From the IMG/VR virus record IMGVR_UViG_3300026521_000003, positions 186,001 to 250,000 of that record: a stretch of DNA of 64,000 nucleotides, one strand, 5' to 3'. A model generated the notes under the pieces. It made no database searches. It saw nothing but the letters and a program-made list of their open reading frames with translations, and was not told the DNA's origin. Shown piece by piece: positions 28,501-53,354 of the stretch (the stretch's first letter is position 1; every line of letters starts with the position of its first letter). The position numbers and the translations under genes are program-made.

Positions 28501-29076
28501 TGGGATTCTTCCTTCTGGAGAACCAGCTATAAGTTCTATACTGTCAATAACTTGCATTTGTTTAGGAGTTAATCTTATATAAAAAACGCTTTCTTTATCA
28601 TAATTATCTGGACCTAGATTAAAAATAGTTGATGAAATTTCACCATCACCAGTAGTCTGATAAAGGTCATTACCATTAAATAGGTTTTCACCTTCAAAAT
28701 TATCAGTTTCTAACCAGTTTAAATCATTAGATAGATTTAAATCTTCAAAATTACTTAAATTATATGATAGGTTGTTTCCTAAAATATCCTTGAATCTTAT
28801 TTCAGTAATAGTTGCACCTTTATCTATTCCGTATGCACCATTAACAACAAATTTTAATAATTCTGCATCTCGCAATAATAATTCATCTTCAGGATTTTTT
28901 ATTGTTGGGTTTAATTTACTATTATCGGTACAGTAAATTCTTTCAAAATCGGTATCTGACCAGAAATTGGTTGTTTGCTTTCTTTTAATAAAACCACACC
29001 CGTCATGATAAACAAAACTGTTTATTGGTATATATGATATATCTTGATCTTTACTATCAATTACATATGCTCTCAT
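25549..29076 (-). CDS. Large tail/structural protein
   Basis: 1175 aa; PCMEL...DGIHLV...SIYCEF fibrinogen-like motif; AGGAG SD. Confidence 0.6.
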   Translation of the reverse strand: MRAYVIDSKDQDISYIPINSFVYHDGCGFIKRKQTTNFWSDTDFERIYCTDNSKLNPTIKNPEDELLLRDAELLKFVVNGAYGIDKGATITEIRFKDILGNNLSYNLSNFEDLNLSNDLNWLETDNFEGENLFNGNDLYQTTGDGEISSTIFNLGPDNYDKESVFYIRLTPKQMQVIDSIELIAGSPEGRIPYSISIFAVKNKDDVQTKVETLVFYKAFSMEIDGMRPARPFKATQNIRPDDPCMELFLNGLTEDGIHLVMNPYTGQLTSIYCEFPDLIEYKDPNDPDYLEYLSSLCDKDPRSIILTKDLNNEYKEETISSFLVNNNYICQIDGCSQFSGSEYTQCIETLCEAKERNPLTKVIDYDINLNKIEQNVEDYLRDRNIICTTDPDPVFLPENTDTQESLLSNLDEIIDSSNPMITVLNPATGEKITITAAEYKNLVFPAQSPSELQQAYIDGLISDGWTLVENLDTLGNPCEVLLENPSTGEQIIVNVENCVKLPPVYDSDNTYQPEIIITEMNLDLNNLEIVDSLGALSYKIEREIIEVPVLDIDGKPIPGEFEQRENIKIIFDTINLPEGMTSGVAEITLSDGINTYSFSLDIKEPTLSVLEPISINAPFTNPLFEKDNNTVIKAFEYDEPGALLNYYYADTISIIGASDKVVVTIEPGENKNGLIKIKPNISADEITEGWYLEEFKIVNGSSEILYKLYITKHMRIKGLENREKEINLGELIVDDGEVQIDLFNIDNIVPTSLTAGGFRSYLQQYGRSHSNRAILDISTGPCYQPGINTYCTQNKLVINPYQQQLNERMMYIIDPYFNEINVRDGLIEPSMVHIVTAYYTVNKYLTVNGQEAQNFIIDKYRFMNSKTEFIYNEGTNTAYRDLKIEYQAEGLNINIENPNILGLKYASIYNGEDKYFDCRNGGPRPKMFTFVTDTQYTDIGSSIINFSDSESEININVEVVQYIDINLPYNNSSRTHTLFPVIIGSQATIQLLHPYNNDWDNLLVWSDDDSIADFNINKETQELELTFNHIGTTNIFISDYHKSLKININCNYNELLLPSYKLYKLINTDIDWHTVDILNVQGTLEIIDNYDSTLVEVRIVNNNSIEFRLLSDIPGSTVINFNDIISTGNVSNSFTVQSIDASLWFNSKSLAENLFYLEIDTSEVFFEIELNEETI

Positions 29077-29389: not shown

Positions 29390-30622
29390 TTGGATGAAAA
29401 TAATCAAAAATTAGATAATATGGATCATAGAAGTCTAGGTAATAAACTTAAACTATTTATGTTTAGTGATTCTACTCCTGGAATGCCATTTTGGCTTCCA
29501 AATGGTGCTCAACTTAGAAAAAGATTGGATGACGTAGTTTATAAAGCTCATAAATTAAGAGGATACAAACCAGTATTATCACCTGCTATGATGGAGGATA
29601 CAATGTGGAAAGTGTCCGGACATTATGAAAATTATAGAGAAAATATGTTTCCTTCGGAAGTAGAAAAAAGAGATTATTTACTTAAACCTATGAATTGTCC
29701 AGGACATGTTATTATGTATCAACATGATGTAGTATCATATAAAGATTTACCAATGAGATACTTTGAATTTGGTCAAGTGCATAGAAATGAGAATGCAGGT
29801 TCACTTCATGGTCTTTTTAGAGTAAGGGAATTTACACAAGATGATGCACATATTTTCTGTCGGGAAGATCAAGTTGAAAACGAAATTAGAAAAGTTATGA
29901 ATTTTATTGATGATTTCCTTAATACATTTGATTTTAAATATAAAATTGAATTTTCAACTAAACCAGAAAAAGCTGTAGGTGATACAGAAATTTGGGATAA
30001 AGCTGAAAATTCAATAAAAAATGCATTAGAGTCTATGGATTTAGATTATCGTATAAATGATGGAGACGGTGCATTTTACGGTCCTAAAATTGATATTAAA
30101 ATTCTTGATAATCATAAAAGAGAGTGGCAATTAGGTACTGTACAAATTGATTTTAATTTGCCTCAGCGTTTTAACTTGGAATATACTGGGTCTGATGGAC
30201 AGTTTCACCAACCAGTTATGATTCATAGAGCTATTATGGGTAGTTTCGAGAGATTTATAGGTATTCTTCTTGAACATAAAAAAGGGTTATTGCCTGTTTG
30301 GATGAGTCCAAATCAAGTAGCAATAGTACCTATTAGTGGTTCGGACGAAAAAATTATGAATTATGTATCTGAGATAAAAGAAATTTTAGAAACTAGATTA
30401 GGAGCAGATATTGTTATTTATGATGATAACAACACGCTTAATAGACGTATAAAAACAGCCGAACAAATGAAAAATCCTATTATTATGATTATTGGTGAAC
30501 AGGAAGTAGATAATAGAAGTGTTAATTTAAGACATAAGATTAAACAAAAGAGATATGAAGAATCACTACAAGATTTTATATATCATTTAGAAGATGAAAT
30601 GAAAATAACTATTGGAGATTAA
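29390..30622 (+). CDS. thrS: Threonyl-tRNA synthetase (catalytic and anticodon domains only; no N-terminal editing domain)
   Basis: DHRSLG, SGHY, LKPMNCP, HRNE..G.LHGLFRVREFTQDDAHIF, GAFYGPKID, WQLGTVQIDF and IHRAIMGSFERF. Start is TTG 29390 or ATG 29420. Confidence 0.96.
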   Translation: MDENNQKLDNMDHRSLGNKLKLFMFSDSTPGMPFWLPNGAQLRKRLDDVVYKAHKLRGYKPVLSPAMMEDTMWKVSGHYENYRENMFPSEVEKRDYLLKPMNCPGHVIMYQHDVVSYKDLPMRYFEFGQVHRNENAGSLHGLFRVREFTQDDAHIFCREDQVENEIRKVMNFIDDFLNTFDFKYKIEFSTKPEKAVGDTEIWDKAENSIKNALESMDLDYRINDGDGAFYGPKIDIKILDNHKREWQLGTVQIDFNLPQRFNLEYTGSDGQFHQPVMIHRAIMGSFERFIGILLEHKKGLLPVWMSPNQVAIVPISGSDEKIMNYVSEIKEILETRLGADIVIYDDNNTLNRRIKTAEQMKNPIIMIIGEQEVDNRSVNLRHKIKQKRYEESLQDFIYHLEDEMKITIGD

Positions 30623-30623
30623 T

Positions 30624-30917
30624 ATGAAAGATATAATTATAGGATTTGGTGCAATAATACTTTTAATAACTGGTTTTGTACTATTATTTGCTCTTATAGG
30701 AGCATTAGTTTACGGATTTGGATATATTTTAGGTTGGGCTATTAATTTAATTGTTGGTCCAAAAATATTATTTGGTATTACATTTCCTCAATTTTTTGGG
30801 GTAGTATTTTTAACAGGTGGTACTATTGCAGGTATAATTAGTAGTAACATTCAAGAAAAAAATAATAAAGCTATAGTAGAAATAACTAATAAATTAAAAG
30901 CGTATCGAGGTTATTAA
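30624..30917 (+). CDS. Membrane protein
   Basis: Two or three hydrophobic segments; GGAG SD before ATG 30624. Confidence 0.7.
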   Translation: MKDIIIGFGAIILLITGFVLLFALIGALVYGFGYILGWAINLIVGPKILFGITFPQFFGVVFLTGGTIAGIISSNIQEKNNKAIVEITNKLKAYRGY

Positions 30918-30937
30918 TCCTAAACCCTTATTTTTTA

Positions 30938-30945
30938 TATAAATA
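30938..30945 (+). promoter_or_regulatory. T4-type late promoter TATAAATA
   Basis: Exact match 22 nt upstream of 30967. Confidence 0.65.
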
Positions 30946-30966
30946 AAAGAAAAAAGGAATTTTTTA

Positions 30967-31518
30967 ATGGCTGATATTGTTTCGCAAAAGCTTGCAGAAG
31001 TATTAAATGTCGAAGATGAGATTAATGGTACTTCTAATGAATCTGAAGATAGTGTTAATCCATTGACGGAACAACCGGTTTATAGTTCATCGTTGGTTAC
31101 TCAAGCTGATATTGATGCATTTAATGATGTTGAAGCGGGAATAGGGTTGGAAAATTTTAGTAAAGTCGTCCTTATGAAATGTGCTCAAAAAGCTATGAAT
31201 GACCATGATGAATTAATAGATACAATGGCTAAAGTAGATGATTCAAAAGCTGCTAGACTTGCAGAAGTAGCAGTTTCTGCTCTCTCTAATGCATCGGATG
31301 CTGCAAAAGCATTAATGAATTTTACAATGTCTAAAGAAAAACTACAAATTGAAAAATCTAAATTAGAAATTAAATCTGTTACCATTAATAATTTAGGTGA
31401 TAATACTGGTGGAGCTATGTTAGGTGGTACCCAAAAAGAGGTTTTACAACAAATTAAAGATATGATGAATGATGATAGTGATGCTACCGATGATCCTCCA
31501 CCATTAGTAGAAGTTTAA
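30967..31518 (+). CDS. Probable terminase small subunit (gp16-like)
   Basis: Helical core AARLAEV...A..LM, then TINN and GGTQKEVLQ, resembling gp16 (PRxxEV ... GSxxEL); late promoter upstream. Confidence 0.5.
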   Translation: MADIVSQKLAEVLNVEDEINGTSNESEDSVNPLTEQPVYSSSLVTQADIDAFNDVEAGIGLENFSKVVLMKCAQKAMNDHDELIDTMAKVDDSKAARLAEVAVSALSNASDAAKALMNFTMSKEKLQIEKSKLEIKSVTINNLGDNTGGAMLGGTQKEVLQQIKDMMNDDSDATDDPPPLVEV

Positions 31519-31598
31519 AATTATGTTAAAATAATGTATAATTTTGTTTTAAGTGATATAAATATAATCGAAAAAAAAACTTAGAAGGAAATCTATAC

Positions 31599-31841
31599 AT
31601 GAATTATAAACAAATTCAACAAAAATTAAATGAAATCTCTAATAATTCTTTTCATATGCTTGGATTAGATGCATTAGAAGATATTTTAACAGATCTTGAA
31701 GAATTAAGTGAAACTGCGGATACATTAAATGAAACCGATGAAGGTGATGGAGAATACTCTGAAATTATGGAACAGATTGAAGATTTAATGTACACTATTG
31801 ATCAAGAAATAGATGCTCTAGAAGACCCAGATTTTTATTAA
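31599..31841 (+). CDS. Highly acidic small protein
   Basis: TATAAATA at 31557-31564; D/E-rich helical hairpin. Confidence 0.65.
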   Translation: MNYKQIQQKLNEISNNSFHMLGLDALEDILTDLEELSETADTLNETDEGDGEYSEIMEQIEDLMYTIDQEIDALEDPDFY

Positions 31842-31860
31842 AACCATATTTAACCGAACT

Positions 31861-31882
31861 TTAAGTAATATATTTGTATAAT
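31861..31882 (+). promoter_or_regulatory. TTAAG-N11-TATAAT early/middle promoter
   Basis: Same spacing recurs at 33953, 42071, 43459 and 59644. Confidence 0.55.
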
Positions 31883-31909
31883 AATAATAAACGTTTAAAG
31901 GTTTGTTAT

Positions 31910-32800
31910 ATGAAAATTACTTTTTTAGGTTCGGGTTCAGCATTTGTACCAATGTCTGAAAATTATCAATCAAATATTTTATTTGAAAAAACATTAACAG
32001 AAACTACATTTTCAACCCCTGAATCATCACCATTACCAATGGTCGGTGGTGTATATCCCATTGGCGAAGAAACCAAAACTTATAAACTTTTAATGGATGC
32101 AGGAACTCATATCCAAGAATCATTACTCTCTCAAAATATAGACGCAATAGATTTAGATGCAATTTTTATTTCTCATTTGCATGGAGATCATTGTCATGGT
32201 CTGGAATACATTGGATTCAAACGCTACTTTATTCCTGAATTTGGTACTAATAAACCTAAACTTCTTTTAAACAATGAAATATCAGATAAATTATGGAATG
32301 CTGTTTTAAAAGGTACAATGGGTAGTATAAATGGAAGTAGAACTGAACTAGATACTTATTTTAATGTAGTACGTATTAAACCTAGAGATGGTTTTCAATT
32401 TGCAAATATAGAATTTTCATTGATTCAGGTTCCACATGTAATCGATGATTACGAAGAAGTTCCAGCATTCGGTTTAAAATTTAAAGATGATGATATTAAA
32501 GTTTTTATTACTGGTGATACTCAATTTGATTTTTGGAGGATGATTGGACAATATGAAGACGCTGATATTATCTTTCATGATTGTGAAATGTTAGAATATC
32601 CAAATTCTGTACATGCGCAATTTCATCAGCTAAAAGAGCTACCTGCACAGTATAAACAAAAAATGTGGTTATATCATTATATGTTATATAATAAAACCTT
32701 TGAAGAATTAGAGAAAGAAGTATTGGATGCAGGTTTCGCAGGCTTAGTTAAGCGAGGTCAAGTTTTCGATACTAAATTAATAAAGGAAGAAGGAAAATGA
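31910..32800 (+). CDS. MBL-fold metallohydrolase, Apyc1 (anti-Pycsar)-like cyclic nucleotide phosphodiesterase
   Basis: MKITFLGSGSAF, LLMDAG, ISHLHGDH..GLE, KPKL, LW, GDT, IFHDC, VHA and LP...K.WLYHY. Confidence 0.75.
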   Translation: MKITFLGSGSAFVPMSENYQSNILFEKTLTETTFSTPESSPLPMVGGVYPIGEETKTYKLLMDAGTHIQESLLSQNIDAIDLDAIFISHLHGDHCHGLEYIGFKRYFIPEFGTNKPKLLLNNEISDKLWNAVLKGTMGSINGSRTELDTYFNVVRIKPRDGFQFANIEFSLIQVPHVIDDYEEVPAFGLKFKDDDIKVFITGDTQFDFWRMIGQYEDADIIFHDCEMLEYPNSVHAQFHQLKELPAQYKQKMWLYHYMLYNKTFEELEKEVLDAGFAGLVKRGQVFDTKLIKEEGK

Positions 32801-33057
32801 GTTTAAGTTATAATAAGTTAAAAGAAATAAATGCCGGCGATATATTATATGATTGCGAAGCTGGGATTAATATCGAATTTAAAGTTTTAGAAGTTCCTAT
32901 GGAAGAATACAACGAATCATTAAAAAGTAATCAGCTTTCATGGAAAGGTATAACTCCAGAAGGGGAAGAAATTAAGTTTTTAATAATTGAAAAATTTTCA
33001 CATTATGGACCGAGAATTTATACTTATAAAGCATACGCACATATAATAGGAGATTAA
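32797..33057 (+). CDS. Hypothetical protein
   Basis: ATGA overlap with the upstream gene. Confidence 0.65.
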   Translation: MSLSYNKLKEINAGDILYDCEAGINIEFKVLEVPMEEYNESLKSNQLSWKGITPEGEEIKFLIIEKFSHYGPRIYTYKAYAHIIGD

Positions 33058-33061
33058 TATT

Positions 33062-33370
33062 ATGGGTAAAAAAAATACTGAAATGGAAATTAAAGACTTT
33101 GAATACTATTTAGTAGTTATGGATAGCAGGCAAGATTATATAATTAGTTATGGGTATGAAGAATTTCCATTAATTTTGGATATAAAATATGCCTTTGAAC
33201 AAATACCTAAAGAACCAGATCTTATAGCTGCAATTCCTGATTGGCAAAAAGTTTTTGATTATGCATCAATCGAAATTATGCCACATAAAAAATTTATTAA
33301 GTACATGCTAAAACAGGAAGAAAAAGCGTTAAAACAAGATAAAAAGAAAAAAAAGAAGAAAGGTAAATAA
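33062..33370 (+). CDS. Hypothetical protein with poly-Lys tail
   Basis: AGGAG SD. Confidence 0.65.
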   Translation: MGKKNTEMEIKDFEYYLVVMDSRQDYIISYGYEEFPLILDIKYAFEQIPKEPDLIAAIPDWQKVFDYASIEIMPHKKFIKYMLKQEEKALKQDKKKKKKKGK

Positions 33371-33708
33371 TGTATTATCATCATATGCATTATAATTACT
33401 TTTCAAATGATAATAATAATTATGAAATAAAATTTTATATTTGGACGGATTACGATGATCGTATTAGGAAATATGCTATTATTGGTGAAATTGAAACAAA
33501 ATATATAGCCTATAATGAATTTACTAAGAGTAAGTTTGCAATCGATAAAAAAGATACATATCGTAATAAAGATGATTTAAAATATGAAAAATTTAAAAAA
33601 TATACACTAAAGAAGCCTTTAAAAAGTCGAATAAAATATCTTAAAACTACAAAACAGATAGAATTTCGAGATAAATTTATGAAAGAATTTCCGGAGAAAA
33701 TATTATGA
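33370..33708 (+). CDS. Hypothetical protein, C-terminal PE-tag family
   Basis: Ends KEFPEKIL*. Confidence 0.7.
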   Translation: MYYHHMHYNYFSNDNNNYEIKFYIWTDYDDRIRKYAIIGEIETKYIAYNEFTKSKFAIDKKDTYRNKDDLKYEKFKKYTLKKPLKSRIKYLKTTKQIEFRDKFMKEFPEKIL

Positions 33709-33956
33709 AAGAAATCAATGTTACGACTGAAACTATTACTAAAGAAGAAATTATAAGTTTAACATGTAATAAATGTGGTAAAACAGTAGAAGGCGATCAT
33801 GTTGCTTATGCATCGGATATTGAAACATGGACTCATGAATTTGGATATGGTAGTAGATTCGATACAGATAAATTAGAATTTGAACTATGTGATGACTGTG
33901 TTGAATCGTTTCTTAACTCATTTAAAATTCCAATAAAATTCATAAGCTCTTATTAA
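33705..33956 (+). CDS. Small Zn-finger-like protein
   Basis: CNKCG...FGYGS.FD...LCDDC. Confidence 0.65.
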   Translation: MKEINVTTETITKEEIISLTCNKCGKTVEGDHVAYASDIETWTHEFGYGSRFDTDKLEFELCDDCVESFLNSFKIPIKFISSY

Positions 33957-33992
33957 GGTGATATTTTATATAATTTAAAAAAGGATTATATA

Positions 33993-34553
33993 ATGACAAA
34001 CGCACAAAAGCATATATCAAAATTTATTAGTTTGATTCTTAGACATAACCCTAAAAAATTTAATTTTAATATTGAATATAATGGGGCTTGGGCAAATACT
34101 CAAGATTTAATCGATCTTATGAAAAACAACGGTAAAAATGTATCAATGCAAGATTTAGAAATTGTAGTTTTAGAAGATTCAAAAGGTCGTTATTCATTTA
34201 ATGATGATAAAACTAAAATTCGAGCAAATCAAGGACATTCTATTGATGTTGATCTAGGTTTTAAACCGTTAGAAAAGAATGAACTCCCAACATGGCTTTA
34301 CCATGGTACAAATAGTCGATTTGTGGATAGTATTTTAGAAATTGGATTAAAACCTATGAGTCGACAATATGTACACTTATCGGATAATATAGAAACTGCT
34401 TTACAGGTAGGAGATAGAAGGAAGAAAGATAATACTGAAACTCATATTTTTAAAATTTCAACTATTGAGGCCATAAATCAAGGGATAGAATTTTATAAAT
34501 CGGAAAATGGTGTATATCTAGCTAATTTTATTCCATCAAAGTTATTACGGTAA
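33993..34553 (+). CDS. kptA: RNA 2'-phosphotransferase (Tpt1/KptA)
   Basis: SKFISLILRHNP, KGRY, IRANQGHS, LYHGT, MSRQYVHLS and NGVYL. Confidence 0.93.
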   Translation: MTNAQKHISKFISLILRHNPKKFNFNIEYNGAWANTQDLIDLMKNNGKNVSMQDLEIVVLEDSKGRYSFNDDKTKIRANQGHSIDVDLGFKPLEKNELPTWLYHGTNSRFVDSILEIGLKPMSRQYVHLSDNIETALQVGDRRKKDNTETHIFKISTIEAINQGIEFYKSENGVYLANFIPSKLLR

Positions 34554-34559
34554 ACTAAT

Positions 34560-35057
34560 ATGAACACATTTAACTCGGATTATGAATTTACTGATGAAGA
34601 GATAAAATATTTTAAGCAAGTGAGTTTCCAACATTCAAAGCTCAAAAGAGAAAATAAAAGACAGGAAATGATTGACGGCTATGAAGAGCCAATAGATATG
34701 AATTTTAGGAAGCTTAAGCAGGGATTAAAAGTTTTTGTTACGAATCCAAGAGGGTTAATTATCCTAGGATTTATTCGTATGGCAAAATTAAGAGATTCGT
34801 ATATTGTTGAAAATGAGGACGGTATTCCTATAACACATGAAATGTTGAATCCGAGTGCAAAAATAACAAATAATAAACCTATTGTTTTTGATATTGCGAA
34901 ACCAAATCATAGGATGATATTTTTAAGTTTTAAGGAAGCAGAATTACATTTTTTACAACCCTTGTTTGATTGGCAAGAAAGATATAATGTACCTATTCCT
35001 GAAATCTTAAATAGTGCAAAGATATTAATTTCTAAGTATCCGGAAGAATTTATATAA
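34560..35057 (+). CDS. Hypothetical protein, C-terminal PE-tag family
   Basis: Ends SKYPEEFI*. Confidence 0.7.
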   Translation: MNTFNSDYEFTDEEIKYFKQVSFQHSKLKRENKRQEMIDGYEEPIDMNFRKLKQGLKVFVTNPRGLIILGFIRMAKLRDSYIVENEDGIPITHEMLNPSAKITNNKPIVFDIAKPNHRMIFLSFKEAELHFLQPLFDWQERYNVPIPEILNSAKILISKYPEEFI

Positions 35058-35067
35058 GGAGTTTATA

Positions 35068-35565
35068 ATGAAAAGAGCAATTTATGCAGGAAGTTTTGAT
35101 ATTATTCATAATGGTCATATATCAATAATAGAAAGAGCAATCAATTTATTCCCAACAAGAAAAATTACAATTATAGTTGCTAATAATCGTAATAAAAATC
35201 ATATGTTTAGTGCTGAAAAGAGAATGGCAATAGTAAAAGCTTCACTCGACCATTTATCTGATAAAGTTGAAATTATTATGTATGATGGTATTGTGAGTGA
35301 TTGGACTAATAAACACTCTGCTGATATTATGATTCGAGGATTGAGAGATGGTAATGACCTAACTTATGAATTTTCGTTAGAGCAATTTACAAGAGGTACA
35401 TCGAATATGGAAACTATTTATTTATCACCATATACTCAGCACCTAAATACCTCATCATCGTTGTTACGAATGTTTATTCAAACAAATAATTTGGATAAAG
35501 TTAAAAATTATATTTCAGAAGAAGGATTTAATACATTGTATAAAATTTTAAAGGATCGGGTATGA
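35068..35565 (+). CDS. coaD: Phosphopantetheine adenylyltransferase
   Basis: AIYAGSFDIIHNGH, K..MFS.E.R, IRGLR...D..YE and SSSL. Confidence 0.85.
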   Translation: MKRAIYAGSFDIIHNGHISIIERAINLFPTRKITIIVANNRNKNHMFSAEKRMAIVKASLDHLSDKVEIIMYDGIVSDWTNKHSADIMIRGLRDGNDLTYEFSLEQFTRGTSNMETIYLSPYTQHLNTSSSLLRMFIQTNNLDKVKNYISEEGFNTLYKILKDRV

Positions 35566-35840
35566 TATATCAATCATGCAACGTATCTCGAGGAGATAAG
35601 GATGAATATTATACATCAATAGATCTTAGTATTCAAGATAATAAATTGGAAACTTTGTATGCGCAAAAAGTTTTTGCATTAGATACAGAAATCACAATAG
35701 TACCCAAGTCAATTTTAAATGTGCTAAAACGTTACAATAAAGATTTAATTGAGCTAATTTCAACAAAGTATCCAGAAGATGAATTACGAGGTGATTTAAT
35801 TGAATTTTCTAAGTTGATGGATGTTATAAAAGATGACTAA
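35562..35840 (+). CDS. Hypothetical protein
   Basis: Overlapping ORF in the operon. Confidence 0.6.
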   Translation: MIYQSCNVSRGDKDEYYTSIDLSIQDNKLETLYAQKVFALDTEITIVPKSILNVLKRYNKDLIELISTKYPEDELRGDLIEFSKLMDVIKDD

Positions 35841-36219
35841 AAAATATATACTTGTAAAAGATTTAATACCAAATAATGAATATTTGTATCTTTTTAGTAC
35901 ATCTGGTTCTTATAGAATTATAAAAGTTAAGTATGTAATTGATAAAAAATTTGAAGTTATTATAGAAAATGAGGAAGAATCGTTATTTTATAATGAAATA
36001 CCACTTAATTTGGAATATAATGAATTTAGTATAGATTCTGAAGAAGATGGAATTGAAAATTTATATAATCTTGATGAAGAAGAAGACATCGAAATAATGT
36101 GGGTGTTAAATACTATTAAAGATTTTAAAATAGCAACAAATATAGAATTCTCAAAGTTTTTAACATTAGTTGAAAAATTAAAAAGGGATTATCCTGAATT
36201 AATAGTTAAAGGTATCTAA
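35833..36219 (+). CDS. Hypothetical protein, PE-tag family (3-aa extension)
   Basis: Ends RDYPELIVKGI*. Confidence 0.7.
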   Translation: MTKKYILVKDLIPNNEYLYLFSTSGSYRIIKVKYVIDKKFEVIIENEEESLFYNEIPLNLEYNEFSIDSEEDGIENLYNLDEEEDIEIMWVLNTIKDFKIATNIEFSKFLTLVEKLKRDYPELIVKGI

Positions 36220-36560
36220 TGAAAAAGATTTATTTTATACATGAAAATACTTCACCAATTAAGGTTGCCGGTGTATTTGTGCAGATCCCAACAGACTACG
36301 TGGTAACAGTAGGATTTATTAAAACAGAAGAAGAGATAGCACTTTCAATGGGTGATGAACCAAAAAATACAGTTTATATGTATAATGATAATATGGCTAG
36401 AGTTGAATTACATAATTTTTTACCGGGTATTGTTTTTGATAGCTATGAAGAAGGGTGTCGAGTTTTAGTTAAAATATTAAGTACTCGTATTAAATATGAT
36501 AAAGAAATTAATAAAACTTATCTTACATTATTGGATGAATTTCCAGAAGGAGTTTTATAA
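36219..36560 (+). CDS. Hypothetical protein, C-terminal PE-tag family
   Basis: Ends DEFPEGVL*. Confidence 0.7.
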   Translation: MKKIYFIHENTSPIKVAGVFVQIPTDYVVTVGFIKTEEEIALSMGDEPKNTVYMYNDNMARVELHNFLPGIVFDSYEEGCRVLVKILSTRIKYDKEINKTYLTLLDEFPEGVL

Positions 36561-36883
36561 TGTATAAAATAGGTGATAAAGTGTGGTTTTATACTTATGA
36601 TTCTGGATTACGAAAAGTCTCGATTATTAAGATAGAAGAAAATAATGTTATTTTAGAAAATGAAGATATTCTGCCTCCTGATTTACCTTTACGAGTTCCT
36701 AAAAAAGATATTTCTTTTTCTAAAGAACGTATAGAATTGTTAGCTTTCGCTGTTAATTATAAGAAAGGTTGGCTGAAGCGAGATATAGATAGAAGTATAG
36801 AAGATAATGATATTGAACAAATAAAATATCATAGGAAAATGATGGATTTATCTATTAAGGAGTTCCCAGAATTATGGGTTTGA
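36560..36883 (+). CDS. Hypothetical protein (SH3-like N-terminus), PE-tag family
   Basis: Starts YKIGDKVW; ends KEFPELWV*. Confidence 0.7.
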   Translation: MYKIGDKVWFYTYDSGLRKVSIIKIEENNVILENEDILPPDLPLRVPKKDISFSKERIELLAFAVNYKKGWLKRDIDRSIEDNDIEQIKYHRKMMDLSIKEFPELWV

Positions 36884-37152
36884 AATCAAGTAAAAGCTTA
36901 GAACCATGTAATTGTAAAATATGTGTAAGAACAAGAAAATTTAAAGCTGTTTTAAAACGTGTAACAAATGATGAAGATAAGAAATTTTTAGAAACACTTT
37001 TTGACAGTTTAAATGATCTTGAGGATGAAATGGATTATCTTGAAATATATTTAGAAAATTTAAGAACTTTATACCCAAAAGTATATAGGGAAATCCATAC
37101 AGTTGAAAAGTTAAAAAATGGTGATGAGAATTTTCCAGAATTAAACGTATAA
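36874..37152 (+). CDS. Hypothetical protein, C-terminal PE-tag family
   Basis: CxCxxC near the N-terminus; ends ENFPELNV*. Confidence 0.7.
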   Translation: MGLKSSKSLEPCNCKICVRTRKFKAVLKRVTNDEDKKFLETLFDSLNDLEDEMDYLEIYLENLRTLYPKVYREIHTVEKLKNGDENFPELNV

Positions 37153-37169
37153 AGTGGAGGTGTTTTAAA

Positions 37170-37514
37170 ATGGGTGTAGTATTAGATGGTGATAGTATAA
37201 ATGAACTTGAAGAAATGATGGATGAGTTAGATATTCCTCATTTTCCATTATTTTTATTTAATGAGCGAGATAGGACTGTCAAGGAACTTACAAAATCATA
37301 TATAGAAGATGAACTAGGTTTAGATGCATCAACTATATCATCTATATGGGAAAGCTTTGCAGAATACTTAGGACACCCAGAATTTATTATCTTTGAGGAT
37401 TCGTTATCGATGGTGAGGACATTTAAAGAACGTTTAGTAGAATTGGATCGTCTTAAACAGCAAGAAGATATTTTAAAAAGTGTATTAAAAATCTATCCAG
37501 AACATATTATTTAG
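37170..37514 (+). CDS. Hypothetical protein, PE-tag family (likely paralogue of 38104-38448)
   Basis: GGAGG SD; ends KIYPEHII*. Confidence 0.7.
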   Translation: MGVVLDGDSINELEEMMDELDIPHFPLFLFNERDRTVKELTKSYIEDELGLDASTISSIWESFAEYLGHPEFIIFEDSLSMVRTFKERLVELDRLKQQEDILKSVLKIYPEHII

Positions 37515-37522: not shown

Positions 37523-38101
37523 ATGAATGATAAAAGATTAAGAAAGCCAAATTTTCCAGATACAGACTTTGGAAAAATAATGCAAAAAGCTGATGAAATA
37601 AAATATACAAAAATTTATAATTATGAGTATTCGTATTTTAAAAAAACGCCTAATGGATTTCGAGAAGACGAATATTTGAATCATACTTATGGGGATGATA
37701 GAGATGGGTATGAGAAATGGAAATCATCGGATGATGCTATAAATTTAACAGTAGGATACTCTGGGGTTATCTCGGCTAGGGAAATCTTAAATAGTGATGA
37801 TAAATTAGTAGGGTATGTATTTGAACGTAAATTACCCGATGAACCTTGGTTAAATGATTTAAATCAAGAATTTGATAAAGCCTGGAATTTATTCTGTAAT
37901 CTTTTAGATGTTAAAGATAAAGAAACTGTTAAATATTATCTATTTAAAGATATTTATGCTTCAGTTCGAGATCGTGGTCAAGAGACAATCGAAAAATTAA
38001 ATACTATGAATAAAATTTTAGAAAAATTTGATGAATATGAACAATATAAAGATGAAGATGATAAGCAATTCATAGATTTTTTTAATAAATTAAAGGGGTA
38101 G
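37523..38101 (+). CDS. Hypothetical protein
   Basis: AGGAG SD. Confidence 0.7.
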   Translation: MNDKRLRKPNFPDTDFGKIMQKADEIKYTKIYNYEYSYFKKTPNGFREDEYLNHTYGDDRDGYEKWKSSDDAINLTVGYSGVISAREILNSDDKLVGYVFERKLPDEPWLNDLNQEFDKAWNLFCNLLDVKDKETVKYYLFKDIYASVRDRGQETIEKLNTMNKILEKFDEYEQYKDEDDKQFIDFFNKLKG

Positions 38102-38103
38102 AT

Positions 38104-38448
38104 ATGGCGGATATTTTATCACAAGATGAGATTGATAGATTGTTGGGATTAGATTATGAACTTAGTGATTTTCCAATTTATATTATTTCTAGCAAAGGTA
38201 TTATGGAAGTTACGTTTGATTCTTTAGGTGTAGAAAGTGATTCAATTGATGAATTTGATTTAAAAAATATTCTTTCTAAAAGATTCGATATTTCAAGAGA
38301 AAATATAGAAGTTTTTAGAAGTAAATTAAATGCAATTAATGCAATTCAAAGAGAATACGAAAATACAGAAAGACTTGCGAAAAAATATAATACGGCGTTA
38401 AAAAGTTTGGAAAAATATTTTGAAGAACACCCTGAATATAAAATTTAA
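38104..38448 (+). CDS. PE-tag protein with a FliM-like N-terminal CheY-binding peptide
   Basis: Starts MADILSQDEIDRLL; ends EEHPEYKI*. Confidence 0.75.
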   Translation: MADILSQDEIDRLLGLDYELSDFPIYIISSKGIMEVTFDSLGVESDSIDEFDLKNILSKRFDISRENIEVFRSKLNAINAIQREYENTERLAKKYNTALKSLEKYFEEHPEYKI

Positions 38449-39002: not shown

Positions 39003-39473
39003 ATGGGAATAGAAATAGAACGAAAATTTTTAATTGATTTTAAAAAGATAGACTTGTATGATAAAAAAATAGAAATTAAGCAGGGATATATTCTGAATAG
39101 TCCTGAAAAGGTAGTACGTATTAGAGTTGCCGATAAAGATGCATTTTTAACAATTAAAGGTAAAAATGAAGGCGCTTCAAGACCAGAATTTGAGTACGAA
39201 ATACCATATGATAATGCTATCGAATTATTAAAATTTACTGATGATAGAATTATAGAAAAAACTAGATATATTTTGAAAATAAATAATGATATTTGGGAAA
39301 TTGATAAATTTCATGGCAAAAACGAAGGTCTTGTAGTCGCTGAGATAGAAATACCATCTGAGGATTATGATATAGAGTTGCCTGAATGGATACTTAAAGA
39401 AGTAACATCAGATACAAAATATTATAATAATAATCTTATAATTCATCCATATTCTACATGGGATAATGTATAA
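39003..39473 (+). CDS. CYTH-domain protein (triphosphate tunnel metalloenzyme)
   Basis: EIERKFL, QGY, VRIR, LTIKG, EFEYEI, EKTRY, WEID.F, AEIE and EVT.D..Y.N. Confidence 0.92.
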   Translation: MGIEIERKFLIDFKKIDLYDKKIEIKQGYILNSPEKVVRIRVADKDAFLTIKGKNEGASRPEFEYEIPYDNAIELLKFTDDRIIEKTRYILKINNDIWEIDKFHGKNEGLVVAEIEIPSEDYDIELPEWILKEVTSDTKYYNNNLIIHPYSTWDNV

Positions 39474-39494: not shown

Positions 39495-39605
39495 ATGATT
39501 CTGGATGAGATTGTAAACATTGAAAAGATCGGTATTGAAAAAACTATTGATATTGAAGTGGATGGAGACCACCTATTTTATTGTAATGGTATTTTAACTC
39601 ATAAT
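39495..39605 (+). mobile_element. Split intein C-fragment, gp41-1-like (37 aa)
   Basis: MILDEIVNIEKIGIEKTIDIEVDGDHLFYCNGILTHN|S. Confidence 0.9.
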
Positions 39606-40100
39606 TCAGCAGCAGGTGATGTTGCTGATGTCTCAGAAGAAAATATCCAAGGGGGTATTTCTAAAATTCAAGCAGCCGATAATGTTATTGGTTTTATACC
39701 AAATGCACAATCAAGAGAAATGGGTATAATGCGAGCTAAATTCTTAAAAACAAGAGATAGTAGTGGTGTTGGTAGTACTGTTGATTTTAAAGTCGATTGG
39801 AGTACCTTAACATTTGAACCTTGGGATACAACTGGAGAGAATAATCCATCAGTTTTGAATTATGCAGCACAAGCGCAAAATGCAGCACAATCATTAAATG
39901 CAGATCAACCCTTGCAAAAAACTACAAAAGGTAAGAAAAAACCATCTGCTAGTGATTTAAAAGGTAATTCGGGTGCAGTAGTAAAATCGGATGATGAAGA
40001 TGATGATTCTAGCACATCGGGTAAAAAAACCAAAGGTATTATTAAGGGACTTGGTGGTAAAAAGAAAAAAGGACTTAACAGAGAAGTTAAGATGTTATAA
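39495..40100 (+). CDS. gp41-type replicative helicase C-terminal fragment preceded by a split-intein C-fragment
   Basis: 37-aa IntC ending THN, then S+1 and the helicase tail IQGGISKIQAADNVI...FLKTR.S.GVG. Own TATAAT (39469-39474) and AGGAG SD. Confidence 0.85.
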   Translation: MILDEIVNIEKIGIEKTIDIEVDGDHLFYCNGILTHNSAAGDVADVSEENIQGGISKIQAADNVIGFIPNAQSREMGIMRAKFLKTRDSSGVGSTVDFKVDWSTLTFEPWDTTGENNPSVLNYAAQAQNAAQSLNADQPLQKTTKGKKKPSASDLKGNSGAVVKSDDEDDDSSTSGKKTKGIIKGLGGKKKKGLNREVKML

Positions 40101-42116: not shown

Positions 42117-42668
42117 ATGCAGCGTTTATCATCAGAACACAGATCTTTATTACAAACTAATCCACTATTTTCAAAAATGATTTTTGAATTTCATGATGGG
42201 TGGTTTGAATTAATTTACGACTTGGGTATGAAAATCCTAGGTTATTGTAATGCTAAAAAAATTGAACTTCCTCAAATCCGCCAAATTAAAGAAAAATTTG
42301 GAACTCTCCGTTTTTATTATATTGATAAAACCAATGATGCACAGATTAGAGAGTGGGTTAGAGATGCTGAATCTCGATCAGAATTTATATGTGAAGAATG
42401 TGGTGAACGTGGCGAATTGAGAGTTGATAACGGCAGATGGGGAGTAGTTTGTAGTATTCATAGTTCCCCTACTTCATTATCTCTATCAGAATATCAAGAA
42501 ATGAGAACAAAAGCAGAGCATGAAGCAAGAAAATGTTCTAAATGTGGTATTGGTGGAGCAGAGATTTACTGGGATGGAGCTCAAACTATAAATTTATGTA
42601 ATCAGCATAAAGAAAATTATTCTTTATTATCTCAATATTTATCAGAACAAAAGGTTGCGGATCTATGA
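42117..42668 (+). CDS. Conserved phage hypothetical protein with Zn-binding motifs
   Basis: GWF.LI...QIKEKFGTLRFY...CEECG...CSKCG. Confidence 0.7.
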   Translation: MQRLSSEHRSLLQTNPLFSKMIFEFHDGWFELIYDLGMKILGYCNAKKIELPQIRQIKEKFGTLRFYYIDKTNDAQIREWVRDAESRSEFICEECGERGELRVDNGRWGVVCSIHSSPTSLSLSEYQEMRTKAEHEARKCSKCGIGGAEIYWDGAQTINLCNQHKENYSLLSQYLSEQKVADL

Positions 42669-42988
42669 CTGAGGCAGAAAGAAAGTTTTTATATAGTTTT
42701 AGTAATAGCATACGGGAAGCTATGTTGGAAGAACATTATATGTTGCATTTTGATGAAGAGAAAGAAGAATTTATATTTGTTTTAAGAACTGCAACAAATT
42801 GTAATACTCGGCATGCACTAACAAAAAAAGAAGTTTTAAGATGGTATTACTCGGAATTAAATAATGATGATTCTAACCTACTTAGGAATTTTTCAAATTA
42901 TTATGATTTAGAATATGATTATTTTTTATTTAAACTTAAAGAAATTATAAAAAAATATTTAAGAATATATCCGGAATATTTTGTTTAG
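42665..42988 (+). CDS. Hypothetical protein, C-terminal PE-tag family
   Basis: Ends RIYPEYFV*. Confidence 0.7.
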   Translation: MTEAERKFLYSFSNSIREAMLEEHYMLHFDEEKEEFIFVLRTATNCNTRHALTKKEVLRWYYSELNNDDSNLLRNFSNYYDLEYDYFLFKLKEIIKKYLRIYPEYFV

Positions 42989-45047: not shown

Positions 45048-45500
45048 ATGAAAATTTATACTTCGTATTATGCTAATATTAGACATATACCCGATGATTA
45101 TTTTATAGTCGCTACAAGTGGAGCAATTTCTGATGAAATAGCCTCGGTAGTTGATAGTTGGGACAGAAAGTTAGCACCATCAAAAGACATCTATTTTGAA
45201 TATAAAGATAATCCTGATTGGGAAAAATATACCAGAAGATTCAAAGAAGAAAGACTTAAAAAAATCGATTGGTTAGAGTTGTTAGAAAAATGGGAAGAAA
45301 TAGCAAATCAGAAGAATAAACCGTTAGAAAATATTGTATTGTGTTGTTATGAAAAACCGACCGAATTTTGCCATAGACACATTTTGAGCGAAGATCTCGA
45401 GAAATTATTTAAAACGGAGGTTAAAGAATTTGGATTGGATCGTCATGAGAGAGTAGACTATAAAATGCAACCAATGGCATCCACAGATTTTTTATTTTAA
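45048..45500 (+). CDS. DUF488-like protein
   Basis: IYTSYYA, LAPS, Y..RF and LCCYEKP.EFCHRHIL; ends ASTDFLF*. Confidence 0.75.
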   Translation: MKIYTSYYANIRHIPDDYFIVATSGAISDEIASVVDSWDRKLAPSKDIYFEYKDNPDWEKYTRRFKEERLKKIDWLELLEKWEEIANQKNKPLENIVLCCYEKPTEFCHRHILSEDLEKLFKTEVKEFGLDRHERVDYKMQPMASTDFLF

Positions 45501-45501: not shown

Positions 45502-45741
45502 ATGAGTATTTTAGAAAAATCATTAGAAGAATTTATTTTTCCTTTTAGTAAATTGCGATTTGAGTTATTAACTTCACCATCAAAAAATAATATAATTCAA
45601 GCAGTAGAAACGGTTAAAAGATATTTTTATTCTAATGATTATCCACACGACAAAGATTTATATTTGGATGATTTAATTGCAATAAAAAATTATATTGAAA
45701 TTAATTATCCTATTAGTAAATTTCCAGAGTATTACATATGA
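45502..45741 (+). CDS. Hypothetical protein, C-terminal PE-tag family
   Basis: Ends SKFPEYYI*. Confidence 0.7.
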   Translation: MSILEKSLEEFIFPFSKLRFELLTSPSKNNIIQAVETVKRYFYSNDYPHDKDLYLDDLIAIKNYIEINYPISKFPEYYI

Positions 45742-46106
45742 AATATTTATGGGTGCAAAAAGGTGGTGGTGATTTTAAAATAGGTAAAGATATAACTGAA
45801 TGCAATCTGAAATTTAATCCTATAAAAATTAATGTGTCGATTGATGAAGATTTTCATAGTAATATAGAATTGCTAAAGTATTTACCTGCAGGTACTGATA
45901 CGGGATCAGGTAACTTTATTATAATGTATGTTGATACTATTGAAAAAGTACGAGTAAAATGGTATAAGTTAATTATATCTCATTATAATCATTTATTATG
46001 TTTAGGAGATTTGATTAATTTATCATCTGACTGGAGTAGTAAGATAAAAGCTATAGAAGAAGAAATAATAAATCATAGAAAGGGGTATCCAGAATTATGG
46101 GTATAA
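45738..46106 (+). CDS. Hypothetical protein, C-terminal PE-tag family
   Basis: Ends KGYPELWV*. Confidence 0.7.
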   Translation: MKYLWVQKGGGDFKIGKDITECNLKFNPIKINVSIDEDFHSNIELLKYLPAGTDTGSGNFIIMYVDTIEKVRVKWYKLIISHYNHLLCLGDLINLSSDWSSKIKAIEEEIINHRKGYPELWV

Positions 46107-46342
46107 TATATGATAGATGTAACCTTTTAGCCATGATCGATAGGGTTAAAAATAAAAAATCTATAAGTGAAATAGTTGATAGATATGGTTTTTTTAATGT
46201 ACGCAAAGAGCTATTACTTATGGATGAACTCCGAAAACTACCTAGTTTTAAGGAAGATAGAACATCAAAGCGTAGAAAAGCCCGTCTTAGTGAACTTACA
46301 TCTTATTTTTCTAAAGAGGAGTATCCAGAATTATGGGTCTAA
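46097..46342 (+). CDS. Hypothetical protein, C-terminal PE-tag family
   Basis: Ends EEYPELWV*. Confidence 0.7.
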   Translation: MGIIYDRCNLLAMIDRVKNKKSISEIVDRYGFFNVRKELLLMDELRKLPSFKEDRTSKRRKARLSELTSYFSKEEYPELWV

Positions 46343-46584
46343 ATGATGATTTAGCGAAAGAATTTAAGAATATTAGTTTTATAAATCAACTATGTATGGA
46401 ATGTATATCACCTAAAAGTATTATCGATGAATTTGAGTTGATGTTTGTTCTTCAATTTGTACGTCGTACTCTAGAATATAAAAATTTTCAATTAAGTGAT
46501 AATCTTATAAAAAATTCAGAAATTGTTTATACTTATATAGTTCATTTATATCCTGTTGACCAATATCCAGAATTATGGATTTGA
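46333..46584 (+). CDS. Hypothetical protein, C-terminal PE-tag family
   Basis: Ends DQYPELWI*. Confidence 0.7.
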   Translation: MGLNDDLAKEFKNISFINQLCMECISPKSIIDEFELMFVLQFVRRTLEYKNFQLSDNLIKNSEIVYTYIVHLYPVDQYPELWI

Positions 46585-46618
46585 TATAAATAATTATAAC
46601 CCAACTAAGGTGATAATT

Positions 46619-46858
46619 ATGGAAGAATTTTACGCTAGAATATCTCAGATTCATAGTACTTTCCAACCTGATTTAAATTCTATTGCTAAGAGAGAATTAT
46701 TTTTATCAACTATTCAATGTTGCTTAATTACAAAATTTCCACTAATAGCTCATTATGATGGATTGACTATAAATTATTATGGTGATGATATTGAAATTTT
46801 AATCGATGAAGAATTAGAACAAGAGTTAAAGACTAAATACCCAGAATCATTTAAATAA
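46619..46858 (+). CDS. Hypothetical protein, C-terminal PE-tag family
   Basis: ATG 46619 after AAGGTG; ends TKYPESFK*. Confidence 0.65.
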   Translation: MEEFYARISQIHSTFQPDLNSIAKRELFLSTIQCCLITKFPLIAHYDGLTINYYGDDIEILIDEELEQELKTKYPESFK

Positions 46859-53342: not shown

Positions 53343-53354
53343 TAAGGTTTAAAT

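What the first reader, a model, noticed from the sequence alone, without database searches (positions are those of the whole stretch)
38104..38448. Phage protein begins with the CheY-binding peptide of the flagellar switch protein FliM
Seen: N-terminus MADILSQDEIDRLL on a 114-aa PE-tagged protein that is otherwise unrelated to FliM. Known: the FliM N-terminal LSQxEIDALL peptide binds phospho-CheY, and Campylobacterota FliM begins MA(D/E)ILSQEEIDALL (recalled). The probable paralogue 37170-37514 has only a degenerate version (VLDGDSINEL). Inference: a CheY-P sponge that alters motor switching or chemotaxis in infected cells, possibly limiting superinfection by flagellotropic phages or changing dispersal. 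With the PE tag it could instead route CheY to another partner.
Basis: partly seen in the sequence, partly recalled or inferred. Interest (0 to 1): 0.8.

Follow-up and report, generated by a model that had tools for sequence, protein, structure and literature searches.

The report
Phage protein wearing FliM's CheY-docking peptide
A small protein of an uncultured giant phage starts with an exact copy of the short peptide that the bacterial flagellar switch protein FliM uses to catch the chemotaxis signal CheY, and the same peptide heads unrelated small proteins of other phages, including cultured Campylobacter phages, so phages of this bacterial group probably interfere with the host's flagellar control.

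Summary
ORF 38104-38448 (+) encodes 114 aa starting MADILSQDEIDRLL and ending HPEYKI, behind a good ribosome-binding site.

- **Specificity:** In a scan of species genomes, MADILSQxEID at an ATG opened a FliM-sized or locus-truncated ORF in all 120 hits. About 105 were Campylobacterota, and 9 of 9 sampled ORFs were FliM by Pfam.
- **Conservation:** Six syntenic orthologues keep the head at 88% pairwise identity, against about 25% for the rest of the protein.
- **Recurrence:** The same head sits on at least five unrelated bodies in phage contigs. One of these is a "hypothetical protein" present in 29 Campylobacter phage records (CP220, NCTC12673 and others). Ten further small non-FliM proteins carry it in metagenomes. 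Full-text searches found no description of this.
- **Function:** It is inferred, not shown. The most likely role is a cytoplasmic decoy for partners of the FliM N-terminus: CheY-P, or FlhG, which binds the same motif and controls flagellar number and division site in Campylobacter.
- **PE tail:** It is real, found on 24 of 98 ORFs, and specific to this phage lineage.

The parts
38104..38448 (+). Gene for the 114-aa head-bearing protein (stop codon 38446-38448)
   Evidence: ORF list and translation. Identical protein on IMG/VR contig IMGVR_UViG_3300026521_000003 of 289,880 bp.
38104..38145 (+). Head, residues 1-14 (MADILSQDEIDRLL): a copy of the FliM N-terminal EIDAL peptide
   Evidence: The only PDB hit of residues 1-22 is the FliM N-peptide co-crystallised with CheY, 4IGA_B. 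All 120 genomic matches to MADILSQxEID open FliM-sized or locus-truncated ORFs, and 9 of 9 sampled are FliM by Pfam. 11 of 14 columns are invariant in six orthologues. The AF2 models put an extended stretch at 1-6 and a helix at 7-14, at low pLDDT.
38146..38175 (+). Linker, residues 15-24 (GLDYELSDFP), acidic and of low model confidence
Evidence: Orthologues carry DVVED or DVVDDD here, which is the acidic linker of Campylobacterota FliM.
38176..38427 (+). Body, residues 25-108: beta-hairpin, short helices and a long C-terminal helix; fold unassigned
   Evidence: AF2 models of pLDDT 67-71 and pTM 0.33-0.41. Foldseek against PDB gave no hit below E = 1.
38428..38445 (+). PE tail, residues 109-114 (HPEYKI): [FYH]-P-E-x-x-[ILV] at the free C-terminus
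   Evidence: 24 of 98 ORFs in the window end this way, against 0.45% of internal 12-mers. The tail is conserved in orthologues (HPEYKI, YPEHRI, HPEYTL, NPEYTI, HPQHLI).
38093..38098 (+). Shine-Dalgarno-like AAGGGG, 5 nt before the ATG
   Evidence: Sequence. Conserved as AAGGG or AAAGGA in orthologous loci.
37170..37514 (+). Probable paralogue (114 aa) with a degenerate head (MGVVLDGDSINEL) and a YPEHII tail
   Evidence: Alignment A1 at 19-20% identity. blastp E 0.002 to 5e-5 in a nine-sequence database. hhalign E 0.0014.
37523..38101 (+). Conserved upstream neighbour (192 aa, unknown function) that always precedes the head gene
   Evidence: Same order in L001, L003, L140 and L143. No family, PDB or Atlas lead.

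Best explanation
The gene encodes a small cytoplasmic host-takeover protein of a large myovirus-like phage that most likely infects a flagellated member of the Campylobacterota. Its first 14 residues reproduce the EIDAL peptide at the N-terminus of FliM. In the motor, this peptide is the high-affinity capture site for phosphorylated CheY. In the phage protein it is presented at the free N-terminus on a flexible acidic linker, as it is in FliM. The proposed mechanism is competitive mimicry. Made in quantity in the infected cell, the protein binds CheY-P in the cytoplasm, and possibly FlhG as well. CheY-P then no longer reaches FliM, the motor stays in its default rotation state, and chemotactic reversals stop. 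Shown here: the motif identity, its near-exclusive association with FliM in cellular genomes, its selective conservation, and its recurrence on unrelated phage proteins. Inferred: binding to CheY-P, the effect on switching, and the benefit to the phage. Candidate benefits are altered dispersal of the infected cell, or lower susceptibility to further flagellum-dependent phages.
For: (1) Residues 1-22 hit only the FliM N-peptide crystallised with CheY (4IGA_B) in the whole PDB.
About 105 are Campylobacterota. 9 of 9 sampled are FliM by Pfam, and the Pfam model starts only at about residue 40.
(3) Six syntenic orthologues: head identity 0.88 against 0.24-0.27 for the rest. 11 of 14 head columns are invariant against 3 of 79 body columns (p 2e-9). 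Synonymous/non-synonymous changes are 5/1 in the head against 13/24 in the body. Ser6 is encoded by both TCA and AGT.
(4) Invariant in nine phage proteins of at least five body types: M1 I4 L5 S6 Q7 E9 I10 D11 L13 L14.
(5) A profile of the phage heads retrieves, apart from phage proteins, FliM fragments (PF02154, named FliM by NCBI and JGI).
(6) Literature: FliM_N is the high-affinity CheY-P capture site (PMC7957414). CheY binds the EIDAL motif (PMC6946799). An E9K change in the motif disturbs chemotaxis in Vibrio (bioRxiv 10.1101/2022.04.21.489128), and E9 is invariant here.
(7) The gene lies in a one-strand block of small genes that includes counter-defence-type genes (Apyc1, Tpt1, CYTH), typical of host-takeover regions.
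Against: No binding, co-fold or expression evidence could be obtained. The body and the PE tail are conserved within the family, which a pure sponge does not need. Position 12 is Arg in this protein, where 115 of 120 FliM have Ala. Natural FliM does tolerate Q, E or L there, and orthologues carry Ala. One orthologue has Ser in place of D11. FliM_N binds CheY-P only with moderate affinity (general knowledge), so a decoy must be abundant. The host is inferred, not identified. The same motif also binds FlhG, so sequence alone cannot name the target.
Confidence: 0.45

Rival explanations
1. The head targets FlhG, not CheY. FlhG is a MinD-like ATPase that binds the EIDAL motif of FliM or FliY. It limits polar flagella to one per pole. 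In Campylobacter, which lacks a Min system, it also prevents division at the poles. A decoy would pull FlhG off the C-ring and disturb flagellar number and division-site control. This would resemble the cell-division inhibitors of other phages.
For: The EIDAL motif is reported as necessary and sufficient for FlhG binding in Shewanella putrefaciens. In C. jejuni, FlhG controls flagellar number and polar division, and fliM mutants make minicells and extra flagella (PMC6946799). The head-bearing phage proteins are concentrated in phages of Campylobacterota, the group where FlhG has this added division role.
Against: Direct FliM-FlhG binding was not detected in Vibrio by size-exclusion chromatography, and has not been shown for Campylobacterota in the papers read. 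No benefit to the phage is evident. Nothing in the sequence separates this reading from CheY binding.
Confidence: 0.2
2. The protein is a two-ended adaptor or address label, not a sponge. The head docks on CheY-P or FlhG, both concentrated at the flagellated pole. The PE tail or the body docks on a second partner shared with the other PE-tailed proteins of this phage. Either the host protein is delivered to that partner, for example for degradation or sequestration, or the phage protein is taken to the cell pole.
For: 24 of 98 ORFs in the window share x-P-E-x3-COOH at a fixed distance from the C-terminus, against 0.45% of internal 12-mers. The tail is also frequent in related phage contigs (10/42, 17/46, 6/9, 5/6) and absent from six other phage loci. 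The body and tail are conserved in all six orthologues. The same head is fused to at least five different bodies, as expected of a targeting module.
Against: No receptor for the PE tail is known or was found. No REC-domain, MinD-like or recognisable protease gene lies in the 64 kb window. Head-bearing proteins of other phages have no PE tail, so the head works without it.
Confidence: 0.15
3. The head binds some other receiver-domain protein. Candidates are a host response regulator outside chemotaxis, a receiver domain of a defence system, or a phage-encoded one in the 226 kb of the genome outside the window.
For: FliM-like peptides appear to be discussed for CheY-like domains outside chemotaxis. 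This rests only on the titles and abstracts of two PorX papers listed, which were not read. The gene lies among counter-defence-type genes.
Against: The head matches the host FliM peptide residue for residue, including the acidic FliM linker in orthologues. This argues that the natural FliM partners are the targets. No receiver domain was found in the window.
Confidence: 0.07
4. The head is a relic of a captured 5' end of fliM, or a chance amphipathic helix, with no function of its own.
For: Phages do pick up host gene fragments. Some head-bearing proteins carry up to 20 residues identical to host FliM.
Against: The head is conserved far above the rest of the protein (p 2e-9), with synonymous turnover. 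It recurs on unrelated bodies in several phage groups. There were 0 chance matches in shuffles. Nucleotide comparison gives no sign of a recent capture for the window's gene.
Confidence: 0.03

Closest known systems
FliM N-terminal peptide (FliM_N, EIDAL motif) of the flagellar switch
   Same: Same sequence signature (I-L-S-Q-x-E-I-D-x-L-L) and same position at the extreme N-terminus. It is followed by a flexible acidic linker, and the predicted conformation is extended and then helical. It is identical over 12 of 14 residues to the commonest Campylobacterota FliM head, MADILSQEEIDALL.
   Different: It is not attached to a FliM middle domain or a SpoA domain, so it cannot be part of the C-ring. 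It is encoded by a phage. Ala12 is replaced by Arg in this copy.
EIDAL motifs on FliY and FliN, for example Bacillus FliY (a CheY-P phosphatase of the switch)
   Same: These are examples of the same peptide used outside FliM to recruit CheY-P or FlhG.
   Different: Those proteins are switch components with CheC-like and SpoA domains. The phage protein has neither. Neither PF16973 (FliN_N) nor any CheC family appears among its Pfam hits at E up to 1.
phrog_8774: 121-128 aa hypothetical proteins of Campylobacter phages (CP220, CP21, CPt10, NCTC12673 gene 149, CP81, PC14, F-series)
   Same: Small phage proteins that start MA[QMH]ILSQEEIDALL. Their hosts are Campylobacterota, and their function is unknown.
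   Different: Their bodies have no detectable similarity to the window's protein, and they lack a PE tail. They are analogues that share a module, not homologues.
Phage proteins that switch off a host motility organelle, such as the type IV pilus inhibitors Tip and Aqs1 of Pseudomonas phages (from general knowledge, not checked here)
   Same: A small early phage protein directed at the host motility machinery. Superinfection exclusion is the usual rationale.
   Different: Those proteins bind the pilus ATPase and do not mimic a host peptide. No flagellar-switch or chemotaxis decoy of phage origin turned up in the literature searches.

Membership tests
FliM (flagellar motor switch protein) | N-terminal EIDAL / CheY-binding peptide | tested here: met
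   MADILSQDEIDRLL against the FliM head consensus MADILSQEEIDALL from 120 genomic FliM. The only PDB hit is the FliM peptide 4IGA_B.
FliM (flagellar motor switch protein) | FliM middle (CheC-like) domain, PF02154 | tested here: not met
   No PF02154 hit at E up to 1. Genuine FliM score 176-275 bits.
FliM (flagellar motor switch protein) | C-terminal SpoA domain, PF01052 | tested here: not met
   No hit. The protein is only 114 aa.
EIDAL-motif ligands of CheY-P / FlhG (functional class) | Consensus LSQxEIDxLL at the free N-terminus on a flexible linker | tested here: met
   Sequence. Start codon supported by the SD and by orthologues. Low-pLDDT residues 1-20 with a helix at 7-14.
EIDAL-motif ligands of CheY-P / FlhG (functional class) | Selective conservation of the motif | tested here: met
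   Head identity 0.88 against about 0.25 for the body. 11 of 14 head columns invariant against 3 of 79 body columns.
EIDAL-motif ligands of CheY-P / FlhG (functional class) | Physical binding to phosphorylated CheY | not testable with these tools
   The structure tool takes single natural sequences only, so no co-folding was possible. There is no biochemistry.
EIDAL-motif ligands of CheY-P / FlhG (functional class) | Physical binding to FlhG | not testable with these tools
   Same limitation. Literature only.
phrog_8774 (Campylobacter phage head-bearing proteins) | Match to the family profile over the whole protein | tested here: not met
   No PHROG hit for the window's protein at E up to 0.01. 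CP220 and PC14 proteins score 195-236 bits.
PE-tailed small proteins of this phage lineage | [FYHN..]-P-E followed by exactly three residues, the last one I, V or L, at the C-terminus | tested here: met
   HPEYKI. 24 of 98 ORFs in the window and 5/6 to 10/42 ORFs in related contigs share it.

The most novel reading that the evidence does not exclude
Phages of Campylobacterota carry a portable FliM-head module that they graft onto different small proteins. In this jumbo-phage lineage it is combined with a second portable module, a C-terminal P-E-x3-COOH docking tail shared by about a quarter of the small proteins. The head-plus-tail protein would then be a viral adaptor that hands a host signalling protein (CheY-P or FlhG) to a common phage-controlled hub. 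That would be a bacterial-virus counterpart of the short-linear-motif mimicry and adaptor hijacking known from eukaryotic viruses.
Probability: 0.15. Interest if true: 0.9.

Novelty: new variant of a known kind. Interest (0 to 1): 0.8.

Why it matters
If the head binds CheY-P or FlhG, this would be the first phage-encoded decoy of the flagellar switch that the literature searches could find. It would also be a clear case of short-peptide mimicry of a host protein by bacterial viruses.

It gives a testable function to a "hypothetical protein" conserved in all 29 matching Campylobacter phage records. These are phages studied as biocontrol agents, and some depend on motile flagella for infection.

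It also opens the question of why infected Campylobacterota cells should stop reversing, or mis-count flagella and division sites. The test system already exists: C. jejuni with phages NCTC12673 or CP220.

The PE tail suggests that this phage lineage uses a shared docking signal on many small proteins, which is unexplained in its own right.

Tried and rejected
- **Known phages:** Megablast and tblastn of the region, the target protein and a 667-aa ORF elsewhere in the window (46896-48899) against INPHARED phages found no relative.
- **Protein families:** Pfam, PHROG and PDB sequence searches of the whole protein gave only chance-level hits, such as Prp8 and Sec20.
- **Fold:** Two AF2 models reached pLDDT 67 and 71, with pTM up to 0.41. 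Foldseek against PDB gave nothing below E = 1, so no fold is assigned.
- **ESM Atlas:** Scores were 0.75 or lower. The FliN_N, FliM and CheC clusters among the named hits are a lead only. The Atlas gave nothing for the upstream neighbour.
- **Host identification:** The ThrRS-like gene in the Atlas gave mixed phyla. Sample and run accessions were not found in any paper. Nucleotide comparison of heads with 120 fliM 5' ends showed no clear recent capture.
- **Spurious locus:** L006 from the viral scan was a false match in a 3,226-aa protein.
- **Other registers of the head:** ATG plus one codon and ATG plus three codons before the [IVM]-L-S-Q motif gave 0 hits in IMG/VR.
- **The 152-aa head-bearing protein of GC 51% (L010):** It has no relative among cultured phages.
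- **Promoter and terminator scan:** Uninformative in this AT-rich DNA.

Full report
**1. The observation**

ORF 38104..38448 on the + strand encodes 114 residues. They begin MADILSQDEIDRLLGLDYELSDFP and end EEHPEYKI. AAGGGG lies at 38093-38098, 5 nt upstream of the ATG, and overlaps the end of the preceding gene. Orthologous loci keep a similar purine-rich box, and one of them starts with GTG at the same codon. The peptide is therefore the real N-terminus. The back-translated pattern for I-L-S-Q-x-E-I-D-x-L-L occurs once in the window and in none of 100 dinucleotide-preserving shuffles. The rest of the protein shows no FliM domain and no significant match in Pfam, PHROGs or the PDB.

**2. What the head matches**

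With residues 1-22 as query, the only hit in the whole PDB is chain B of 4IGA. That chain is the FliM N-terminal peptide of Thermotoga maritima crystallised with CheY (E 0.92, weak but unique).

- Every stretch opens an ORF that is either cut by the locus end or complete, and 101 of the 102 complete ORFs are 326-378 aa long.
- The one short exception, 202 aa, still carries PF02154.
- About 105 of the 120 records are titled Campylobacterota: Sulfurimonas, Sulfuricurvum, Sulfurospirillum, Helicobacter, Campylobacter concisus, Arcobacter, Nautiliales, Hydrogenimonas and Wolinella. The others include Mucispirillum and relatives, a few Firmicutes and single MAGs of other phyla.
- Nine of nine sampled ORFs are FliM by Pfam; eight have PF02154 plus PF01052, and the truncated 202-aa one has PF02154 only.
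- The Pfam FliM model starts only at about residue 40, which explains why family scans cannot see the head.

In cellular genomes this peptide is therefore, as far as sampled, a FliM signature. No small non-FliM protein was among the hits.

**3. Conservation in orthologues**

Six syntenic orthologues were found. They are the window's protein, P0002 (78% identical; contigs L001 and L002), P0004 (L003), P0026 (L140), the L143 protein and P0032. Where flanks exist, the same 188-192 aa gene precedes the orthologue. In L001 and L003 the same downstream gene, beginning MGFRTYIGK, also follows it.
- Mean pairwise identity is 0.88 for residues 1-14 and 0.24-0.27 for the rest.
- 11 of 14 head columns are invariant, against 3 of 79 ungapped body columns (Fisher p 2e-9).
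- Between the window and L001, codons 1-24 show 5 synonymous and 1 non-synonymous change. Codons 25-114 show 13 and 24 (one-sided p 0.04).
- Ser6 is encoded by TCA in some orthologues and AGT in another.

Two variations deserve mention. Position 12 is Arg in the window's protein, where 115 of 120 FliM have Ala; other orthologues have Ala, and natural FliM also shows Q, E or L there. One orthologue has Ser in place of D11.

**4. The same head on other phage proteins**

A scan of IMG/VR for M-x-x-[IVM]-L-S-Q-x-E-I-D-x-L-L at an ATG found 12 stretches:
- the window's own contig;
- a 143-aa protein of a second 114-kb phage contig from the same metagenome as L001, which has an unrelated coiled-coil body;
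- 121-aa proteins of Campylobacter phages CP220, CP21 and CPt10;
- 128-aa proteins of Campylobacter phages PC14 and NCTC12673, and a 45-aa truncated relative of these in CPt10 (L018);
- a 168-aa protein on a 146-kb contig of GC 33%;
- a 152-aa protein on contigs of GC 51%;
- one genuine FliM on a contig labelled viral.

tblastn showed the Campylobacter phage protein in 29 INPHARED records, all annotated as hypothetical. In NCTC12673 it is gene 149, AEA86491.1. It forms phrog_8774, of unknown function.

Beyond residue 16, similarity is detectable only within the window's family and within the Campylobacter phage family. Across nine proteins of at least five body types, the only invariant positions are M1 I4 L5 S6 Q7 E9 I10 D11 L13 L14. 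A profile of these proteins retrieved the phage families, followed by a long tail of FliM fragments. It also retrieved ten further small non-FliM proteins with unrelated bodies. These start with up to 20 residues identical to Campylobacterota FliM, including its acidic linker; examples are MADILSQEEIDALLDVVDDD and MADILSQEEIDALLEVVDDE. Two of them were traced to phage-like contigs. Other registers of the motif gave no hit in IMG/VR. The head therefore behaves as a portable module, used mainly by phages with low-GC, Campylobacterota-type genomes.

**5. Anatomy of the protein**

Two AF2 models (pLDDT 67 and 71) agree on the layout:
- an extended stretch at residues 1-6 and a helix at 7-14, both at low confidence;
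- a poorly defined linker;
- a beta-hairpin around the conserved FP motif;
- the tail.

An extended-then-helical peptide on a flexible tether is what FliM_N is described to be. No fold match was found.

The C-terminal HPEYKI belongs to a striking set. 24 of 98 ORFs in the window end in x-P-E plus exactly three residues, the last one I, V or L. Only 0.45% of internal 12-mers carry the motif. The tail is also frequent in the related contigs L001, L139, L140 and L143, and absent from six other phage loci, including the Campylobacter phages.

The proposed paralogue at 37170-37514 has the same length, FP motif and tail, and a degenerate head. The homology is weak but plausible.

**6. Context and host**

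The window is part of a 289,880-bp IMG/VR contig. It has GC 27% and no close relative among cultured phages. It encodes a gp25-type baseplate wedge and a sheath initiator, so it is probably a myovirus-type jumbo phage. It also encodes a DNA ligase, RNase HII, a ThrRS-like synthetase, Tpt1/KptA, an Apyc1-like protein, CYTH and DUF488.

The head gene lies in a long one-strand block of tightly packed small genes, which is typical of host-takeover regions. No receiver-domain or MinD-like gene is in the window. The other 226 kb were not read.

The host is inferred to be a member of the Campylobacterota. The basis is the head itself, the FliM-type linkers of the orthologues (the DVV[DE]D type, common in Sulfurimonadaceae) and the low GC. 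This is an inference, not a demonstration.

**7. Mechanism**

Established knowledge read here:
- CheY-P is captured by FliM_N, the high-affinity site, which acts like a fishing line and raises CheY concentration at the low-affinity switching sites (PMC7957414).
- CheY binds the EIDAL motif (PMC6946799).
- An E9K change in the motif disturbs chemotaxis in Vibrio.
- The same motif is reported as necessary and sufficient for binding FlhG in Shewanella.
- In C. jejuni, FlhG controls both flagellar number and the block on polar division, and fliM mutants make minicells and extra flagella.

A free cytoplasmic copy of the peptide should compete with FliM for these partners. My best estimate is a CheY-P decoy that freezes motor switching (0.45). 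A FlhG decoy comes second (0.2). Third is an adaptor that uses the head as an address and the PE tail as a second docking site (0.15).

The benefit to the phage is speculative. Firehammervirus phages of Campylobacter depend on motile flagella for infection (PMC8713573), so changing motor behaviour could affect superinfection. Yet the capsule-dependent Fletchervirus phages carry the head protein too, which does not favour that single rationale.

**8. Comparison and membership**

The protein is not a FliM. Two of the three defining features, PF02154 and the SpoA domain, were tested and are absent. It belongs to the functional class of EIDAL-motif peptides by sequence, position and conservation, but the binding that defines the class could not be tested. 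It is an analogue, not a member, of phrog_8774. It is a member of the lineage-specific PE-tailed set.

**9. Novelty**

Full-text searches found no description of a phage-encoded FliM-head or EIDAL protein. The searches combined phage with FliM, CheY and mimic; Campylobacter phage with FliM; and EIDAL motif with phage. The library lacks most subscription journals, so prior notice cannot be excluded. I rate the finding a new variant of a known kind: a known docking peptide, newly found as a phage-borne module. Interest is high because it is general, unexpected and directly testable in C. jejuni with existing phages.

**10. Limits**

The host is not identified. The models are of low confidence.

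Noticed in passing
window, 24 ORFs on the + strand, e.g. 1527-1979, 5907-6272, 33370-33708, 34560-35057, 35833-37514, 42665-42988, 45502-46858, 51666-53813: About a quarter of the ORFs end in [FYHN]-P-E plus exactly three residues, the last one I, V or L (FPELWV, YPELWV, HPEWLI and similar). Only 0.45% of internal 12-mers carry the motif. It is equally frequent in related contigs (L001, L139, L140, L143) and absent from six other phage loci. The fixed distance to the free C-terminus suggests a docking or degradation signal read together with the carboxylate. No receptor was found.
   Followed up: partly
window 39495-40100 (+): This ORF opens with what looks like the C-terminal block of an intein (…GILTHNS). 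It continues into the C-terminal part of a DnaB-type primase/helicase (phrog_239, E 6e-9). It may be a split or intein-interrupted helicase gene.
   Followed up: no
window 29390-35565 and 39003-39473, 45048-45500 (+): The same block holds host-interference-type genes: a ThrRS-like class II synthetase, an Apyc1-like anti-Pycsar metallo-beta-lactamase-fold protein, Tpt1/KptA RNA 2'-phosphotransferase, a cytidylyltransferase-like protein, CYTH and DUF488. The order is conserved in L001 and L002.
   Followed up: partly
L144:6001-7626 (protein P0003, 541 aa): A cellular protein in a housekeeping neighbourhood carries about ten tandem copies of (V/M)L(S/T)QEEIDRL separated by acidic, proline-rich spacers. 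A hydrophobic, possibly membrane-spanning stretch follows. It may be a multivalent CheY-P or FlhG binding scaffold.
   Followed up: partly
L141:1-194 (-) and L141:10001-10720 (+): A 43.6-kb phage-like contig (RNA ligase, DNA methylase, many small one-strand ORFs) carries a 239-aa head-bearing protein (P0120). It also carries a separate 240-aa gene with a genuine FliM middle domain (PF02154).
   Followed up: no
L005:10001-11093: In a second phage from the same metagenome, the head-bearing 143-aa protein lies a few genes downstream of a glycine- and proline-rich repeat ORF, among genes that are not annotated. It and the next two coiled-coil proteins end in similar tails (…TINFE, …IAKFE, …IVNFGN). 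This may be another shared C-terminal motif.
   Followed up: no
L014:909-1271 and L018:1016-1150 (Campylobacter phage CPt10): CPt10 has two head-bearing ORFs. One is the 121-aa CP220-type protein. The other is a 45-aa ORF whose sequence matches the start of the 128-aa Fletchervirus-type protein.
   Followed up: no
window 13296-15950 (-): An 884-aa protein with five Big_9 and cadherin-like Ig repeats lies in the minus-strand block of large ORFs (10327-29076). Its domain content suggests an adhesin, and it is a candidate receptor-binding fibre. The baseplate (gp25) and sheath-initiator genes found in the window were not located.
   Followed up: no
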